A DNA stretch of 64,000 nt from assembly GCA_965153285.1 (NCBI GenBank), contig OZ229111.1. One strand, written 5' to 3'. The notes under the pieces were generated by a model. That model was not told the origin of the DNA and did not search any database. It saw only the letters and a list, made by a program, of their open reading frames with translations. Numbering within the stretch: the stretch's first letter is position 1; each line of letters opens with the position of its first letter. Below are positions 25,059 through 57,500 of this stretch, piece after piece. A program made the translations under genes and the position numbers. The DNA comes from Podarcis tiliguerta. Lineage: Eukaryota.

Positions 25059-28000
25059 ACAGAATAAGCCTTATGTGTGGGGATGCAGCTAAACACAAAC
25101 AGATTTCCATTAAAGAGACTCAGATACTTTATCAGAGAGCTCTGGTGACAGCCAGGGAGAAGAAACTGGAGTCAGTTTTCCCAGGACATTCCCCTCCCCT
25201 ATTACAAATGAAATTGCCAGATAATCTCCCACACACCACAAAGCAAATCTCTGGCGCAGGAGTCTCCTCCTCAGCAAGCACAGCTAACTTTAGTAGCTTC
25301 CAAGAAAGACTCACTCTGCAGCAGAATTATGTTTGGTATGCACATCCATTTCATCCCTAACATATCTATCATCCAGATCAGGTTCTGCTATATTGTCTCT
25401 TATTACCTACTGTGGGGAAAAATTTGGTTCACTTACAGCTTGCAACACACTGCATGCATGGCAGCCACTGCCTTTCCTCCTGATTCTATACATGAAGACT
25501 TAAAAAAAAGTCAGCTCACGAAAAAGCCATTGTCGGACCAGTAACCTCCAAGCCATCCTTTCACTAAACACTTCTGTCTCTGCCCTGTCTTACCAATTTT
25601 AAAGGCACTTGAAATAGAAGTAAAGCAATCTGACTTGTTTATGTGGTGGGCACTCAGCTTGAAAAGAACGCAGAGTAATATAAAAAGCAAGTACACAAAT
25701 GAAGGATTTTTAATTGACTAGAAGTCTGGGGCGACTTCTATCAATTTTCTGTTTCAGGGTACATTCCTCCCTTCATAAGTACTTTGCTCATTTCTTAATT
25801 AGATTAAAAATATAAACATATCTATAATTTGATATAGATAAATCTATAGCATTTCAACACACTATTAAAACCAACCATATTCTTATATATGATATAAATA
25901 TTATCCGTGAGTGTATCAGATCGTCATGAATAAATTTACAAGCAATAAAGTAATCGTAACTTATAAAAATGGAAAGGATTACCAATTTAAATTCTGTTTC
26001 AAATTCCAAAAACACTTCGAAGGACTCATATTCCTCCTCATATACCAAATAATTTATTCAGTTTAATAAACAGGCAGTCTTGAATAAATTGATAATATTG
26101 AATAATATGTTGCCCAGAGCCGATCTGAAAAAGTGACAAAGTTTAATCAGCATAACAAGTGAAGGTTGCAAATCTACGACTAAGTCTACCACAGTGGAAG
26201 AAACTGGGCAACTTACCCCTTGTAGCCTAAACCTATGGCCTTTGTCGGTCTTTAAGATATTGCCAGATCTAAGTCCGTCAGTGATGGTACAGAACGCAGT
26301 CTGGGTTTTCTCTACATGTCGCAACAGATCTGTATGCAGTATCATACATGACCATCAAGCTGCTACTAGAATGCTCACACCTGTTACTGCACAGGGCAGA
26401 CCCCAAAAAGGAGGCTGCCAGGTTTTCATCTAGGGCAAGGTCAGGCTAGCTGGTACAAGGCAGGACTACAGCAGGCCCAGCTACACAGCAACCAATTCCC
26501 AGCCCAAAGGCTTCTTACCAAGCACCAGATACTCATTATGTTCCTAACCATCGCTTTCCTGAGGGCAGACAAGAATATTGCAGTGTATCACTCAAATATG
26601 TTGCCTCATTAAAAGAAGATGCAAATGCTGCCAGCCTGGTAGGGTTCCTTTGTTCACATGTGGGTAGGCTTCACACAGGTGATGACTCCACAACTACGTA
26701 TAAAAAACAAAGTCTGGGTAATGAGCAAAGCACTATGTTGTGAGATATCTACCCTTTATTCGTTTTAACCATAGTTCTCCCTTTATACCACAAAATGAGG
26801 GCCCAGCCCTCAGCCACAATTCCAAACTATACTCAGATCCACTTGAGCAACAGATCCTCACTACACCGCTGAATGTCCACAGTAACAATTGAATGTTATA
26901 ATTTACCTATACAGTGGTACCTCTAGATATGAACGGGATCTGTTCTGGAGCCCCGTTTGCATCTAGAAGCAAACGTAACTAGCGATGGCACGTCTGCGGA
27001 TGACGTCATTTTGAGCGTCTGTGCATGCGCAAGCGACGAAACTTGGAAGTAACACGCTCCGTTACTTCCGGGTTGCCGCGGAGCGCAACTTGAACACGTT
27101 CAACCCGAAGCACATTCAACCCAAGGTATGGCTGTAAATGATTATTAATAATTTCCTTAATGCCCAGTGAGCTTACCATTTGTCTTCTTGCACATACCTT
27201 CTTATCTTTCATTCTAGCAAGTTCAAAACCCTTTACAGTCCCCTCAGTTTTACTTTTGCCTATAGACCAAATGCTGAGTGGTTGGGCCTAGGAAGCAGAT
27301 AGTTGACTGGGGGCTAAATCTTGAGTCTAGTTATGAGACTGACAAAAGAAATGTAGAAGCAAAAGTCCCAACGGCACTTAAAATGTATCCTACTTGGCTC
27401 AAAGCTAGGTGGTAGTTTAAAACAAATTACACTACTGTATCTACAGTGATGGAAAGCGTATTTTAACTAAACCAGTCCCCATATGTCAGGATTTATTAAT
27501 TTATTTTTAAAAAACAAAATCACTTCTGCTTCCTGTTACAACCAAATCTGAAAATGGCAGCTGCTGTCAAAGGTGCATCATGCTTCAAAATACTAGTTAA
27601 GCAGGTGAATAAGCCTTTAAAGCAATAGTCTGCTATGATGTTTATGGCCCTTGAGTGAAACTTTGCTTGAACTATACCGGTGCTATAAATTAATACAGCT
27701 TAAGCAGGTGGTGAGACATATGTTGAAAGGGGAGGGCAGGTACTTATATAGGTACTTCCAAATTGGCAACTCTTAGTTGTGCACAATCATTACTCTCCAT
27801 AAAGTCTTTTCCATACAGAAAAACTTTCCACACTCAGAGTTGAGGATATAGTACTTGTTTTATGTGTAATCTGCACCACTAGACATGACATAGGCATGGA
27901 AGTGGGAAAGGGACCATTCTGAACAAGCCAAATTAATTCTTTAATTTACAACAAACCACTTTTTTAAAGTTCTATTATATGGTTTACTTTTATGGCTTCT

Positions 28001-51400: not shown

Positions 51401-54400
51401 TGTCTCCACCCTGATAACCTTGGGATAGATGTGGCCAAACTATCACAAGCCTGAGCTGCTCAGCTAGGACCCCGCCTCCCTCTAGGTTAAGTAATGAATA
51501 AAACAATATCTAACAGGTTTCCGTGGAATTCCAATATTTTTATCTTAAAGTCAAAGGCAGATACCGTTTCTGATTCTATCATTAATCAACCCTTCAGATA
51601 CCTAGGTGAAAGGATCATTTGGATGCTTAGAAGATCTGCCTAATTTAGTTGTGTGTGCAAACTACTTCCATTTTCTTTTTCATACAACCAAATATTAAAA
51701 TTTTAATACTAAGAAATTAATTTAGCTACCAGAAGCTTTTGGTTTTGATAAGGAGGAGAAAGGAGAGAGAAGTCATAGTAGCACTCAAAATACAATTATA
51801 AACCAAAGTATACAAAAGTAAATCAGGGTTCTGTCCACAGCGAAGGTTTAAGTCAATGTCACTACACATCAACACGAATCCATTTAAGGTTTCTATATTT
51901 AAGGAACACCAGAACAAATCCTCATTTTCAATATGTACTGTCCTTTTGCTAGGAAAGCTGCAGGAAAGCTGAGCTTAATACAACACATTTCTGTACCACT
52001 CTTAACATCATTTTAGGGTGGTGCACAACAGTGTTTAAAATATACATATCAAATTTAAATTAACATTAGTGAAGAATATCCAACAAGGGAGAAAAGTTCA
52101 ATTCTGTGCCTCATGGTGTCTGACATCTACGAGAAACCACTGCACAAGATTATTCAGTGTTTTTGGAGTGCTATGTCATCAGGAGTTGATAACACCCAAC
52201 TCCAACTGTGTATAGGCATGAGTACAAAAGTACCAAACCACGTAGAGGGACAGAAGCATGCATGCAAGCTTGACCCTCAATGTCACTGCACACGCCTCTT
52301 CCCTGCTCAGTCTCCAAACCTTCCCATCTTCTATAGGGATTCTACCCACATTCACTTGTACATGATTGATCGCGAAGAGAGTTGTACTTGCATTCACATG
52401 AGGATAATTCCTATACAGACCTTCCCTACACAAGAGAAGGTCAGGGACTGAATGAGGGAAGTGTGCATGATGAAGTTGGGGGCAGGGCTTGTACACTGGA
52501 CCCAGAATCCCTACACAATTTGGTGCTTACATGTTCAGACAAGGACCTGAACACCTCTCCCATCTCTCATTTCCATTTCCGTCCTAGTAGAATCAGTGAC
52601 TGAGACTGGTAATGCATTGCATGGAGCTAAAGGAATTTAAACCTAATTCAGACAAGATTAGTTGATTAGTGCAGCTGCTGGTTCATAGCAGACCTTTCTT
52701 TTTCTATAGGCATATTGCCTGTTTATTTTATTGTTTTAAACCTTTCTGACTCTCTGGAGAGGAGTATTTCATTCTTTCCATCTTACCTTCTGCTAAAGTA
52801 AGCCATCAGATTTGGGGAATTTATAAGGATATACCTCAGTTTCTTGTAGAACGAGAACCATGTGCTAGTTAATAAGGCCAATCTAGAAGGCATACAAGTT
52901 GCTAGACAGCTACTGAAACAGAACTCAAAGGTTTGGGACAGGTATACAGCTCCAGCTAAAACCCCAAACTTTAGCATTCTTGTTCCAAGGATAATAGAAC
53001 TTTAGCAAACTGTTTGTGACTCAATAAGAAATACTGACAGGGCAATTATGCACAGAAGACTTCTGTACAAATGCATCTGCAGGTGATCAGTGTTGTCAAT
53101 CACACATTGCCAGTGGGATCCCAGTTCTGATCACTACTGTTCCACACAGACTAATAGTACTGGGGGAAAGAGCTGTTTTTATGGCAATACCACAATAGCT
53201 CTAAATCCCCTCATCATAAATATCATACGTTAATGCTTCCTGATTGTCACCAATCAGGGCATTATGTAGAAGGGGTTCTTGTGAATGAGAGATCTATGAG
53301 CCCAGGATCTCTGCGGAGTAGTAAAACATTAACAGCACACTGCAAGGCTACAAAGCAATATTCTAGTACAGGAACATAACATAGCACTACCTTGCTCTTA
53401 AGGGTTTGGAAAGCCAACTGGATGGAGGGCAATTCTCACTACAGCAGTTCTCAGAATTTATAGATTAACAAAAGAAACCAGTTTTAATTCTTTCCAGGTC
53501 TACAGAAAATATGTGTACGTGCTGTGGTTATAACAGTACACTTTGCAACAGACAATGGAACAATTAGTCAAATCTATGGCAAAAGAACATTTTAAAAGGC
53601 CTTCATGCTAAGGGGGCAGATTTACCATGAGAAGGAGTGCTATGGAGCTTGAAAGCCATTTTTGCAACACTTGTAAGTGCTTACGCTAGTAAAATCATTT
53701 GCCACATGAAAAAAAAATGAATGAACTACCAGCAACTGAAAGGACACAGAAATAATTTCACAGGAGTGAGACTATCAACAGCCAACAATCAGAGACAGTA
53801 TTTCTTTCCCAAGAGGCAAGGCATCAAGTAATATTGCTGCCCTGGCAAGCTCTTGAATCCTGCTTGATCATTCCTGTTTGCTTTGCCCAGATTTTCCAGC
53901 ACTGGCACAAGAAGTATTACAGATGTGCTGGTAAATGACATCCATACTGCTGCAGATGCTTAAAAACTGAAGCAGAAAAGCTTTGGGACAAAATTGCCTG
54001 TCCCTCTTCATCACAACAAAGAAATATATCAAACGATGTAAACGTATCCTGTAAGCATTGCCACTTTTCAAGGCAAAGCATCATAGTCATGGCATGAGAG
54101 CCCAATCTCCGCGGAGAAGAATCTTACGCATGGAAGCCCAGGGATTCTGCCTGATTCCGTGCATAAGATCAGCAAAGTTGCCTTCTTCAGGCAACTATAG
54201 CATGGAGGGGAATGATGTGTTTCTCATATATATATATATATATATATGCTTTCGTAGATTTTCACGGGTACAGGAATGCAGGTTTTGGTGTCCTCGGGTG
54301 TCTTCCCGTGTAAAAGTTGGGGTGTCTAGGCGACGTTTCGACGAGGTCTCACTCGTCATCTTCAGGCTGGTGCTTTCGGCTTCTTGTTACTGGAACAGAG

Positions 54401-54555
54401 CAGGATCTTATAGGAACTCAAACACTGAGATCCTGCTCTGTTCCAGTAACAAGAAGCCGAAAGCACCAGCCTGAAGATGACGAGTGAGACCTCGTCGAAA
54501 CGTCGCCTAGACACCCCAACTTTTACACGGGAAGACACCCGAGGACACCAAAACC

Positions 54556-54592
<37 letters not shown>

Positions 54593-57500
54593 GATGACAT
54601 AACAAAATCAGTGATTTGAACGTGCTGAGCCCAATAATCTTTGTTTGGGATAGCAGAGTAGTTAAATTGGAATCTGACAGATCTCTGGGTGATGTGAAGT
54701 AGATTGACAAAGACTGGCTTTCAACTGTTGCAACAAACAATGGCAACAACAAAATGATCCCTGTGGAAACCAAGCTGGGGGGGTGATATATGACCAAGTA
54801 TATTTTTGTAAGGAAGCACTAGAGGCTCTTTTCAGTTCCAAAACTTAAAGGCAAATTCCTGGGCTTAACACACTTCAATTAAGTTTATGTCTTTTATACC
54901 TGTCTCCAGTTCATGGGGTCTAAGGAAAATAACAAAGTAGGCCCCAGAGGCCTGTAGTCTGCTACCCCAAACCACTATGTTACAATTTCACATTCAGCAA
55001 AAAATATTTTAAGGAAATTGATTCTCTTATTATAACTTTTTATGGCGTTTTAAGTCCGATCTAAAATAGGGTATAAAAATACAATTTCCTTTATATGAGG
55101 ATTGGTTTAATTTCCTAAATTACAAGTTTAACTATTTCTTGTTAGTGAGCATGAGGCAGGGGACCTTAGAGAAGACTCTTTATTCTCCTGGAAGGGTAAA
55201 CATGGAACTAGCACAGTTATTACCATTGTTTGGGCAAGTAGCTTTAAGGTCACATTATTTTAGTTACCCAGAAATGTACTGCATTGCCTGACTCAGAAAT
55301 TTGGACCTGATGAACTGCGCCAAATTGATGAAAATACTTGATTTTCTCAGAATGTTTCCGTATCCTCCACGACTCGCTACAATGTTATGTTAAAATGTTT
55401 TAGAAGTACTCAAAGCCAATATGAATTACTTATGAATTAAAGAGGATTCAGAACAAAATCTAACACCCCTGCAATGGATAGCAACTCTTCAGTTGCCTCG
55501 GGACTCATCTATACAGCTGCAAATAAAACATTTAAGTGTGCAATATACAATGTGACACTAGTTGGTGATGGTGAACCTTATGGAAAATTCAATGTATTTT
55601 TTTTAAAAAACACTTTAAAAAAAGCATTTTCAGAACGGTTTTTATAAGTATGTAGATTCTACCTCAATTGTGCCTCAGGCTTACTTCACTAGAAGCATAC
55701 ATTTCACTTTCACTGGTCCATTAATTGTTGGTGGGGGGGGGCTGTTTTACAGATCAATAGGTGAAGTATGGCAGCTACAAAAATGAAATACAACTTCACA
55801 AAAGAAAACTTGATTCACAGGTTTTAGAGCTGTTCTATCAGTGAAGGCTTTTTGGAGGCAATATGCAACAACCTTATAACACCTGCATCAACTCCATCCA
55901 TTATGGTCAACAATGCTTGAGAATTATATATTTATGGTTTTAAAAGGAGAGATTTTTGTAAACACTGAGTCACCCTCTGAAAACCAGTACTCTTTTTTAA
56001 AAAAAAATGCACTGTATTTCTAGAGCCAATGACAGTCAGCTGGGACAGAACATTGGGAATTGCAAGTACGAATGCAGCAATAAGCTTTAAACAATAATAA
56101 TGAAATATATGTTGAAAGTATTTAATAATTAATTTAAATATATATATATATTAATTCACTCATTATATGACAAATTTCTGCAAGGATCTATATTGGTGTT
56201 CATGCCTTTTTCTTTCTTTTGCTTTTTCTATTATGAAAATATCTGACAACGGGGCTAACAGACAGTTACGCTTACTGTAGCCTGCTGGAAAGTTTCACGA
56301 TCATCTCCGCTTCTCTCCTTTTGAAAGTGAACGGGGCAATGTGATTACTACCCATTGTTGCTTGTGTATCACTTCAGCCAGGAAAGAGTTGTAAAAATGA
56401 CAGGAAAACACAGTGCTGTTATCACATGACACAATAACACATACACACATAGTAACTGAAAAGACAGACTGCCTTTTATATACAAAATGAGCACATTTCA
56501 GTTCCTTGTTAAGGGCTAGTCTATACCTCTCTTTTTGGAAAAAGGAAAAAAGCAAAGTGTGTGGCAGTTCATTTAAAGCCTTTTTGAAACCACTCATACT
56601 AATGCATGAAAGCCGTGGAAGGCTACAATCTGTTGTCACCTTACTTGAAAGTAAATCCCTCGGAAATAAATGGGGCTTACCTCCAAGCAAGACCATTTAG
56701 GAATAGCATGCAAGCCTTAATTTCAGATGCAGTGTTTCCTTTTGTCCTATGAACTACATACCTGCAATAAAATTGCTAGCTAAAATCAACTAATTAGTGC
56801 CACTGACCTTCTTTGTCACAATTTGCTACATTGTTTACCACTACATTGCTTCATCATATTGTTTCGATAAAGGTAAATTTCTTACCTGAAAACTAGTGCT
56901 TGTGTCTTGGATCCACCAATCAGGAGAAGTAACCATTACCCTACTTATTTAGATTGGAGTGAACTGAATTCTTCCCTAAGAAACTGGAAGAGCTAGAAGC
57001 TAGCTTTCACTGTCCACTCTGTGATTGTGTGAGGAACAAGGAAGTTTCTGGATCCGAATCTCTCACAAGTATTTCCAGGTAAGAAATCTCCTCTTCTAAC
57101 ACTAACAAAACCGACCCCTTTGCAGGGGCAGGACAAACAGGGGAGGAAGATTCAGTCTGTTTACATACATAAAAACCAATGGTCAAGTCAAGACTGTTAG
57201 GAAAAGAGATGTATCCAAATCTCCTTGAGTCCTCTGCTAATTAAGGAGAGACAGAGAGGGGGACACAGAGATCTGCCATGCTGCTTCTCTGATCTGCTTC
57301 TTAGGATTCCCGCCCCCCACAAAAAAAGGGAAATCCAACCAGAGGCTCACAAGTAAGAAGAGAGAAAGTAAGTTATTCTGATCTCTCAGTGGTGTTGAGG
57401 TTTCCAATAGGAATGGGGGGTGGATACAATGACCGCCCCTAGAAATTCAAAGAAGAAAGAGAAGAAATGAAGTACTTAAGGCATCTTCTTCAAGGATCTA

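What the first reader, a model, noticed from the sequence alone, without database searches (positions are those of the whole stretch)
54326..54510. Two opposed minimal hammerhead-ribozyme motifs: each transcript carries a ribozyme plus its own antisense
Seen on +: CCAGC-CTGAAGA-T-GACGAG-tgagac-CTCGTC-GAAA-CGTC-GCC. This is the CUGANGA/GAAA core, a 6-bp stem II, a loopless palindromic ACGU helix III and a GUC triplet (predicted cut after 54504; mirror cut at 54332 on -, the MAP2K4 sense strand). Known: Penelope-like elements carry minimal type I hammerheads thought to act as dimers through a palindromic helix III. Inference: the inverted arrangement puts one ribozyme and its perfect complement on the same RNA, and in MAP2K4 pre-mRNA the complement is transcribed first. 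This could mute cleavage of the host intron and explain why such insertions are tolerated. Caveats: stem I has only about 2 clear pairs and there is an extra U after CUGAAGA, so activity is unproven.
Basis: partly seen in the sequence, partly recalled or inferred. Interest (0 to 1): 0.8.

Follow-up and report, generated by a model that had tools for sequence, protein, structure and literature searches.

The report
Inverted truncated Penelope retrotransposon with hammerheads
The two mirror-image ribozyme motifs are real, but they are the expected by-product of an ordinary dead insertion of a very abundant lizard Penelope-like (Poseidon-type) retrotransposon that landed head-to-head in a (TA)n microsatellite inside a MAP2K4 intron.

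Summary
Observation confirmed. An identical 34-nt minimal hammerhead motif lies at 54471-54504 (+) and 54365-54332 (-), inside a perfect 133-nt inverted repeat, within a MAP2K4 intron (gene on the - strand).

It is not a standalone device. It is two 5'-truncated copies of one Poseidon-type Penelope-like element (PLE), joined head-to-head in a (TA)n tract.
- The "extra U" completes the element's AUG start codon, as in Anolis Poseidon_Ac.
- The outer ends lie 84 and 112 nt into the ORF. Poseidon_Ac starts reverse transcription 111-118 nt in.
- The 28-nt difference is the one-sided PLE "tail".
- Contigs from two lizard species show a very abundant, near-identical family whose ends abut (TA)n.

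Rfam hammerhead models give no hit, but every published feature of the PLE min-HHR is met.

The antisense arm is transcribed first, and the RNA folds into a -288 kcal/mol hairpin, so the ribozyme is masked. The claim that this explains tolerance is unsupported. Such monomers do not cleave without a partner copy or the element's protein, and the PLE integration mechanism explains the inverted layout.

This scan found the same structure at other loci of this genome, and one follow-up (s1-830570) reached the same reading. New member of a known kind; low interest.

The parts
54226..54247 (.). Left half of the (TA)n microsatellite target, (AT)11
   Evidence: TRF; the repeat finder
54248..54275 (-). 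28-nt PLE 'tail', present on this side only. It continues the element's ORF (…[10 protein letters not shown]). The minus copy therefore ends 112 nt after its ATG, at the distal reverse-transcription start site.
   Evidence: Translation and distances. Poseidon_Ac starts RT 111-118 nt into the ORF, and the tail is the sequence between the two RT start sites. A 30-40 bp tail at one end is described.
54276..54427 (-). Minus-oriented 5'-truncated PLE copy, 152 nt (180 nt with the tail). It includes the 19-nt 'spacer' 54409-54427, which is simply 19 more bases of element sequence.
   Evidence: arms. Loose ends of other family copies continue upstream as …CCTCCTCAACAGTGTTTG. Reverse complement printed.
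54332..54365 (-). Minimal hammerhead motif on the MAP2K4 sense strand: C3-A9 at 54365-54359, extra U at 54358, helix II 6 bp, GAAA, palindromic C15.2-G16.2, U16.1, and C17 at 54332. The element's ATG is at 54359-54357.
54428..54560 (+). Plus-oriented 5'-truncated PLE copy, 133 nt. It ends 84 nt after its ATG, at the proximal RT start site, with no tail, directly abutting (TA)n.
   Evidence: Many contigs of other copies end at the equivalent base followed by (TA)n (table 7).
54471..54504 (+). Minimal hammerhead motif, antisense to MAP2K4. C17 is at 54504 and the element's ATG at 54477-54479.
54559..54590 (.). Right half of the (TA)n microsatellite target, (AT)16
   Evidence: TRF

Best explanation
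This is a dead-on-arrival insertion of a young, very abundant Poseidon-type Penelope-like retrotransposon into a (TA)n microsatellite in a MAP2K4 intron of a lizard.

Two 5'-truncated copies of the same element region lie head-to-head, with their 5' ends at the centre and their reverse-transcription start ends outward. That region is the end of the pseudo-LTR, the hammerhead, and the first 84 or 112 nt of the ORF.

Most likely mechanism (inferred from the Anolis Poseidon_Ac in vitro work):
1. The PLE protein nicked both strands of the AT-rich target.
2. Each 3'-OH primed reverse transcription at one of the two internal RT start sites. The distal site was used on the left (leaving the 28-nt tail) and the proximal site on the right.
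3. Both cDNAs stopped after about 130-180 nt and were joined end to end without microhomology.

The hammerhead motifs are carried passively. They are bona fide PLE minimal hammerheads: the core is intact, helix II has 6 bp, helix III is a loopless ACGU palindrome, and the AUG start codon is formed by A9, the extra U and G10.1. In this copy they are almost certainly inert. There is one sense copy per transcript, helix I has 2 bp, no partner copy is available for dimerisation, and the motif is buried in a 133-bp perfect RNA hairpin.
For: Shown here:
- Exact motif on both strands inside a 100% inverted repeat flanked by (AT)n.
- The layout matches the experimentally studied Poseidon_Ac. Its unit junction reads CUGAGGA-U-GCCUGC…GUGGGC-GAAACGUC, with the ATG at A9-U-G10.1 and the cut 26 nt after the ATG. 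Here the cut is 25 nt after the ATG.
- Against Poseidon_Ac the core is identical. Helix II differs at 4 of 6 pairs yet keeps pairing (3 double changes, 1 single). The two helix I pairs both change compensatorily (my hand comparison).
- The outer ends lie 84 and 112 nt into the ORF, against RT starts at 111-118 nt and a tail lying between two start sites in Poseidon_Ac.
- The 37-aa peptide from the ATG matches the N-terminus of P0002 at 68% identity (E 4e-4 against 1.8 billion proteins). The first 10 residues, which are the hammerhead-coding part, are identical. The rest of P0002 aligns by eye, ungapped, at about 53% over 51 residues with Poseidon_Ac residues 33-83.
- Summed contig depth over the element is about 3,000-17,000 times that of the flanks in DNA runs of two species. 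Most laid contigs are >=99% alike. Many contigs end at 54276 followed by (TA)n, and others show shorter 5' truncations next to (TA)n.
- The published PLE signature matches: an inverted 5'-truncated copy, a tail at one end only, and (TA)n targets. The protein cuts and extends both strands.
Against: - No RT/GIY-YIG ORF is present in the window. The link to a full-length element rests on a 37-aa match plus a by-eye alignment to Poseidon_Ac.
- Rfam hammerhead covariance models do not score the motif at all.
- No contig spans the whole palindrome, because contigs break at (TA)n and at the arms. The exact locus structure therefore rests on the assembly alone.
- The dual-strand priming step is inferred from in vitro work on another lizard's element.
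Confidence: 0.87

Rival explanations
1. One reading: the inverted configuration is retained preferentially in introns because the co-transcribed antisense arm masks the ribozyme and prevents cleavage of host pre-mRNA.
For: - The antisense arm is transcribed first in MAP2K4 pre-mRNA.
- The hairpin (-288 kcal/mol) vastly outcompetes the hammerhead fold (-8.5 kcal/mol).
- Several notes of this scan report such fold-backs in introns (unchecked).
Against: - Monomeric min-HHRs do not cleave detectably.
- The Poseidon_Ac HHR needs the PLE protein, and no RNA-seq ends are seen at its cut site.
- The inverted form is a generic product of integration.
- Solo sense copies in introns are reported in the same genome (unchecked).
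- No intron-versus-intergenic comparison was possible from a single window.
Confidence: 0.05
2. Same element, different origin of the fold-back: a single target-primed cDNA snapped back on itself and self-primed, rather than two primings from the two target strands.
For: - The arms are 100% identical.
- Some contigs from other copies join the two arms almost symmetrically with about zero spacer (joints 54398>54437 and 54401>54436). Those joints could also be assembly-graph artefacts.
Against: - A snap-back copy would duplicate the tail, or would leave only one element-target junction. Here both outer ends are clean RT-start ends in (TA)n, and only one carries the 28-nt tail.
- The Poseidon_Ac protein extends both strands in vitro.
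Confidence: 0.06
3. Not a real genomic feature (assembly fold-back artefact), or a DNA-transposon MITE with long TIRs and a TA target.
For: - No contig bridges the whole structure.
- TA flanks are also typical of Tc1/mariner-derived MITEs.
Against: - Both unique flanks are present in independent runs.
- The ends are asymmetric (tail on one side only).
- Other copies continue 5' into non-palindromic sequence and show variable 5' truncation with a constant 3' end, as retroelements do.
- The coding and hammerhead layout equals that of Poseidon_Ac.
- The same structure recurs at many loci.
Confidence: 0.02

Closest known systems
Poseidon_Ac (PAc), the Penelope-like element of Anolis carolinensis, and its protein-assisted hammerhead (Mob DNA 2024, PMC11167929)
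   Same: - Core CUGA-N-GA, then U, then G10.1…C11.1, then GAAACGUC.
- The ORF's AUG is formed by A9-U-G10.1.
- The cut site lies 25-26 nt after the ATG.
- Helix II has 6 bp and helix I is short (3 bp there, 2 bp here).
- Insertion ends lie about 112 nt into the ORF, with an optional tail of about 30 nt.
- AT-rich targets.
- The N-terminal protein region is homologous via P0002.
   Different: - Different lizard and a different family: helix II sequence differs at 4 of 6 pairs and loop II is 6 nt rather than 7.
- The N-terminal peptide is read in a different frame across GAAACGUC.
- Only a 133/180-nt stump is present here, so activity and the RT/EN domains were not seen.
PLE minimal hammerheads (min-HHR; Cervera & De la Pena 2014, PMC4209133)
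   Same: - No helix III loop, and a palindromic 15.2-16.2.
- An unpaired nucleotide 5' of helix II, a long helix II, and a short, poorly defined helix I.
- That paper already reports pairs of min-HHRs 100-700 bp apart on opposite strands, and min-HHRs in reptiles.
   Different: That paper does not discuss the consequence that each transcript then carries a ribozyme plus its antisense. Helix I here is at the short extreme (2 bp, as in D. virilis).
Complex tandem/inverted PLE insertions (Evgen'ev & Arkhipova 2005; Craig et al. 2021, PMC8557442); L1 twin priming as a mechanistic analogue (my own knowledge)
   Same: - A 5'-truncated copy with an adjacent inverted 5'-truncated copy.
- A tail at one end only.
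- A (TA)n microsatellite target that hides any TSD.
   Different: This is an extreme case in which both copies are tiny, so the result looks like a free-standing palindrome.

Membership tests
Hammerhead ribozyme, type I (Rfam Hammerhead_1 and clan) | Conserved core C3 U4 G5 A6 N7 G8 A9 / G12 A13 A14 / A15.1-U16.1 / H17 | tested here: met
   CUGAAGA … GAAA-CG-UC read directly
Hammerhead ribozyme, type I (Rfam Hammerhead_1 and clan) | Three helices around the core within one molecule (helix I of several bp, closed helix III) | tested here: not met
   Helix II has 6 bp (-8.6 kcal/mol). Helix I has only 2 bp and adds nothing. Helix III has no loop and can form only between two copies (ACGU duplex -3.1 kcal/mol).
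Hammerhead ribozyme, type I (Rfam Hammerhead_1 and clan) | Scores with the curated covariance model | tested here: not met
   No hammerhead family is listed even at E<=10, on 421 nt or on 81 nt.
Hammerhead ribozyme, type I (Rfam Hammerhead_1 and clan) | Site-specific self-cleavage after H17 | not testable with these tools
   No RNA run holding the stretch was found. All runs laid were contigs, which cannot show RNA ends.
PLE minimal hammerhead (min-HHR) | [quoted passage not shown] | tested here: met
   U at 54478 (+); G-C closing pair; C-G palindrome; 6-bp helix II (against the criteria).
PLE minimal hammerhead (min-HHR) | Pairing kept through sequence change between families (covariation) | tested here: inconclusive
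   Only one outside sequence was available (Poseidon_Ac). Helix II shows 3 double and 1 single compensatory changes with 0 disruptions, and the 2 helix I pairs both change doubly (hand comparison). The first 10 codons spanning the motif are identical to P0002, against 15 of 27 for the rest (hypergeometric p about 0.009, my calculation). Within-family variation could not be read, because all variants were below 10% of depth.
Penelope-like element, Penelope/Poseidon clade (EN+) | Single ORF with RT and C-terminal GIY-YIG endonuclease | tested here: inconclusive
   Only the first 28-37 codons are present. They match the N-terminus of P0002, whose remainder resembles the Poseidon_Ac N-terminal region.
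Penelope-like element, Penelope/Poseidon clade (EN+) | Insertion signature: AT-rich/(TA)n target, variable 5' truncation, adjacent inverted 5'-truncated copy, 30-40 bp tail at one end, ends at internal RT start sites | tested here: met
   against. The tail is 28 nt and the ends lie 84 and 112 nt into the ORF.

The most novel reading that the evidence does not exclude
Head-to-head PLE stumps such as this one, when transcribed within host introns, yield long perfect dsRNA (133 bp here). This dsRNA could be diced or edited, giving the lizard a standing source of small RNAs against its most active Penelope family, or perturbing MAP2K4 pre-mRNA processing. Ribozyme masking would then be a side effect. 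Nothing here tests this, because no RNA data were available.
Probability: 0.1. Interest if true: 0.5.

Novelty: new member of a known kind. Interest (0 to 1): 0.2.

Why it matters
It matters mainly as a clean negative. A motif pair that looks like a designed ribozyme/antisense device is fully explained by how Penelope-like elements integrate.

Two points may interest PLE specialists. First, this natural insertion shows both features reported in vitro for the Anolis element. Both target strands appear to have been used, and the two arms use the two alternative internal reverse-transcription start sites, 84 and 112 nt into the ORF. Second, in a second lizard family the hammerhead core again overlaps the ORF start codon, while helix II covaries.

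Tried and rejected
- Rfam at gathering threshold on the whole window, and at E<=10 on 421 nt and 81 nt. No hammerhead hit. Only sub-threshold miRNA-precursor and SRP matches, which merely reflect the long hairpin.
- blastn of the arm against the window found no other copy.
- Read laying: all four runs were contigs that break at (TA)n and at the arms. So there was no bridging of the locus, no presence/absence call in the sister species, no RNA ends, and no within-family variant table. X15, guessed to be RNA, covers the intron evenly at about 4-5x and is probably DNA.
- phmmer hit P0001 (830 aa) is a spurious repetitive match.
- ESM Atlas gave nothing for P0002.
- An open frame running into the UGA of the CUGA box ([21 protein letters not shown]) might be the end of the upstream ORF. 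However, about 31 stop-free codons is not significant, so I do not claim it.
- I did not align Poseidon_Ac in a tool, because it exists here only as text from a supplement. That comparison was done by hand.
- The second literature search, on hairpin/siRNA from Penelope repeats, found nothing relevant.

Full report
**What is there**

The 34-nt core motif occurs exactly twice in the window, at 54471-54504 (+) and 54365-54332 (-).

Both copies lie in a 100% complementary inverted repeat. Its arms are 54276-54408 and 54428-54560 (133 nt each), with 19 nt between them. (AT)11 at 54226-54247 and (AT)16 at 54559-54590 flank the repeat. Between the left (AT)n and the left arm lie 28 extra bases (54248-54275) that have no counterpart on the right.

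**Is the motif more than chance?**

I wrote a descriptor for the minimal hammerhead: CUGANGA, 0-1 extra base, helix II of at least 4 bp, GAAA, a palindromic N-N' pair, U, then H. It finds only these two hits in the window, and none in 300 Markov simulations.

By my estimate, chance gives about 0.005 hits per window, and tens to about a hundred per genome. The motif alone would therefore not be decisive at genome scale. The context is what decides.

The result is negative. No hammerhead family is reported at the gathering threshold. None is reported at E<=10 on 421 nt or on 81 nt. The many sub-threshold miRNA-precursor matches only reflect the long hairpin.

I read this negative as expected rather than damaging. 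The motif has no helix III loop and only 2 bp in helix I, so it cannot fit models built on canonical hammerheads. This reading is my inference.

**Fit to the published PLE minimal hammerhead**

Cervera & De la Pena (PMC4209133) define the min-HHR and list features that emerged beyond their descriptor:
- a conserved G10.1-C11.1 pair;
- palindromic positions 15.2-16.2;
- a long helix II;
- a short, poorly defined helix I (2 bp in D. virilis).

All of these are met here. The same paper already reports dual min-HHRs 100-700 bp apart on opposite strands, and min-HHRs in reptiles.

**Fit to Poseidon_Ac of Anolis**

The 2024 Mob DNA paper (PMC11167929) and its File S1 give the closest comparison. Across the tandem unit junction, Poseidon_Ac reads CUGAGGA-U-GCCUGC-(7-nt loop)-GUGGGC-GAAACGUC. 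The ORF's ATG is formed by A9, the extra U and G10.1, and the cut lies 26 nt after the ATG.

The window has the same layout. The ATG is at 54477-54479 (+) and 54359-54357 (-), and the cut lies 25 nt after it.

Comparing the two by hand gives these results:
- The core is identical.
- Helix II differs at four of six pairs, with three double changes, one single change and no disruption.
- Both helix I pairs change on both sides (G-C/C-G here, A-U/G-C there).
- The encoded N-terminal peptides are unrelated across this stretch, and are even read in different frames through GAAACGUC. This points to conservation at the RNA level.

This rests on a single outside sequence, so it is suggestive only.

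**Link to a Penelope ORF**

Translation from the ATG of the minus copy through the 28-nt tail gives [37 protein letters not shown].

A phmmer search of 1.84 billion representatives found P0002 (189 aa). It is 68% identical over residues 1-37, at E 4e-4. The other hit, P0001, is a spurious repeat match.

The first ten residues, which cover the hammerhead, are identical. In the remainder, 15 of 27 are identical (p about 0.009, my calculation).

The rest of P0002 aligns by eye, without gaps, at about 53% identity over 51 residues with residues 33-83 of the Poseidon_Ac protein. The shared pattern is E-LR--I--LYGE--FQ-TR--EKL--R-A-L-C---FL--CRD---IP.

**Ends and tail**

The plus copy ends 84 nt after its ATG, and the minus copy ends 112 nt after its ATG.

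In Poseidon_Ac, reverse transcription starts internally, 111-118 nt into the ORF. The optional 30-40-nt "tail" of PLE insertions is the sequence between two RT start sites. The 28-nt one-sided extension here is that tail.

The 19-nt "spacer" is simply further element sequence belonging to the minus copy. Contigs from other copies continue upstream through it, as …CCTCCTCAACAGTGTTTG.

**Family evidence from public runs**

The stretch is held by runs of two related species. When laid on 53700-55100:
- The single-copy flanks have contig word-depth of about 12-18, while the element bins have about 4x10^4 to 5x10^5. The tool warns that this is not a copy number, but it does show a highly repeated family.
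- Most laid contigs are at least 99% alike: 114 of 136 in X1, 124 of 165 in X4 and 279 of 418 in X5.
- Many contigs end exactly at 54276 and run on into (TA)n: 1 in X1, 6 in X4 and 11 in X5.
- Others stop at 54301, 54338 or 54519 next to (TA)n. This is variable 5' truncation with a constant 3' end, the signature of target-primed reverse transcription.

No contig bridges the locus. Whether the sister species carries this particular insertion therefore cannot be told.

**Mechanism of the inverted layout**

Craig et al. (PMC8557442) describe inverted 5'-truncated copies, a tail at one end, and (TA)n targets as standard PLE features. [quoted passage not shown]

The simplest account is this. Both strands of the (TA)n tract were nicked, and each primed a cDNA, one from the distal start site and one from the proximal site. 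Both cDNAs aborted early, and the ends were joined without microhomology. The bases either side of 54427|54428 do not match the element's continuation. This step is inferred.

A snap-back origin is less likely, because only one arm carries the tail.

**Consequences for RNA**

MAP2K4 coding exons lie on the - strand at about 62937 (…[25 protein letters not shown]…), 49107-48940, 45588 and 39497. I found them using short peptide strings recalled from human MAP2K4, and the long exact matches in context make the assignment safe. The element is therefore intronic, and the pre-mRNA carries the antisense arm first.

The - strand RNA folds into the full 133-bp hairpin at -288 kcal/mol (z = -33). A hammerhead-like monomer fold is worth -8.5 kcal/mol, all of it from helix II. 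The ACGU dimer contact is worth -3.1 kcal/mol.

Masking is thus thermodynamically certain, but it is not needed:
- Monomeric min-HHRs do not cleave detectably.
- The Poseidon_Ac hammerhead needs the PLE protein, and it leaves no RNA-seq ends in vivo.
- An inverted pair offers no second sense copy for dimerisation.

**Earlier notes of this scan**

At least eight other notes describe the same inverted Penelope/hammerhead structure elsewhere in this genome. One follow-up, s1-830570 at ARHGAP26 intron 11, reached the same reading as mine.

Notes of solo sense-oriented copies in introns (s1-827663 and s1-827710) would argue against a need for masking. I could not check them.

**Verdict**

This is a new member of a known kind, of low interest.

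Noticed in passing
window 26328-26507 (-): SCARNA16 scores 143 bits (gathering 65), full length, on the same strand as MAP2K4 and downstream of its exon at about 39497. In this lizard it therefore appears to sit inside the MAP2K4 gene. From memory, the human copy lies in a different host gene (SNHG20, 17q25); I did not check this.
   Followed up: no
window ~62937, ~49107-48940, ~45588-45470, ~39497 (-): Four MAP2K4 coding exons were recognised by long exact peptide matches (e.g. [58 protein letters not shown]). Exact exon borders were not determined.
   Followed up: partly
window 54070-54209: Run X1 holds two contigs over this stretch, at depth 11.7 and 6, differing by 7 letters and 2 gaps. 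The minor form shares its variants (54100, 54110, 54127, 54158) with another individual of the same species and with the sister species. The insertion-bearing haplotype may therefore be heterozygous or polymorphic.
   Followed up: no
window 54398>54437, 54401>54436, 54301>54520 (joints): Contigs from other family copies pass from one arm into the other at different, nearly mirror-symmetric points. Either many other fold-back insertions exist with about zero spacer, or these are de Bruijn graph turn-around artefacts.
   Followed up: no
window 54366-54427 (-) reading frame: An open frame (…[21 protein letters not shown]) ends at the UGA inside the CUGA box, just 2 nt before the AUG.
   Followed up: partly
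I did not examine it.
   Followed up: no
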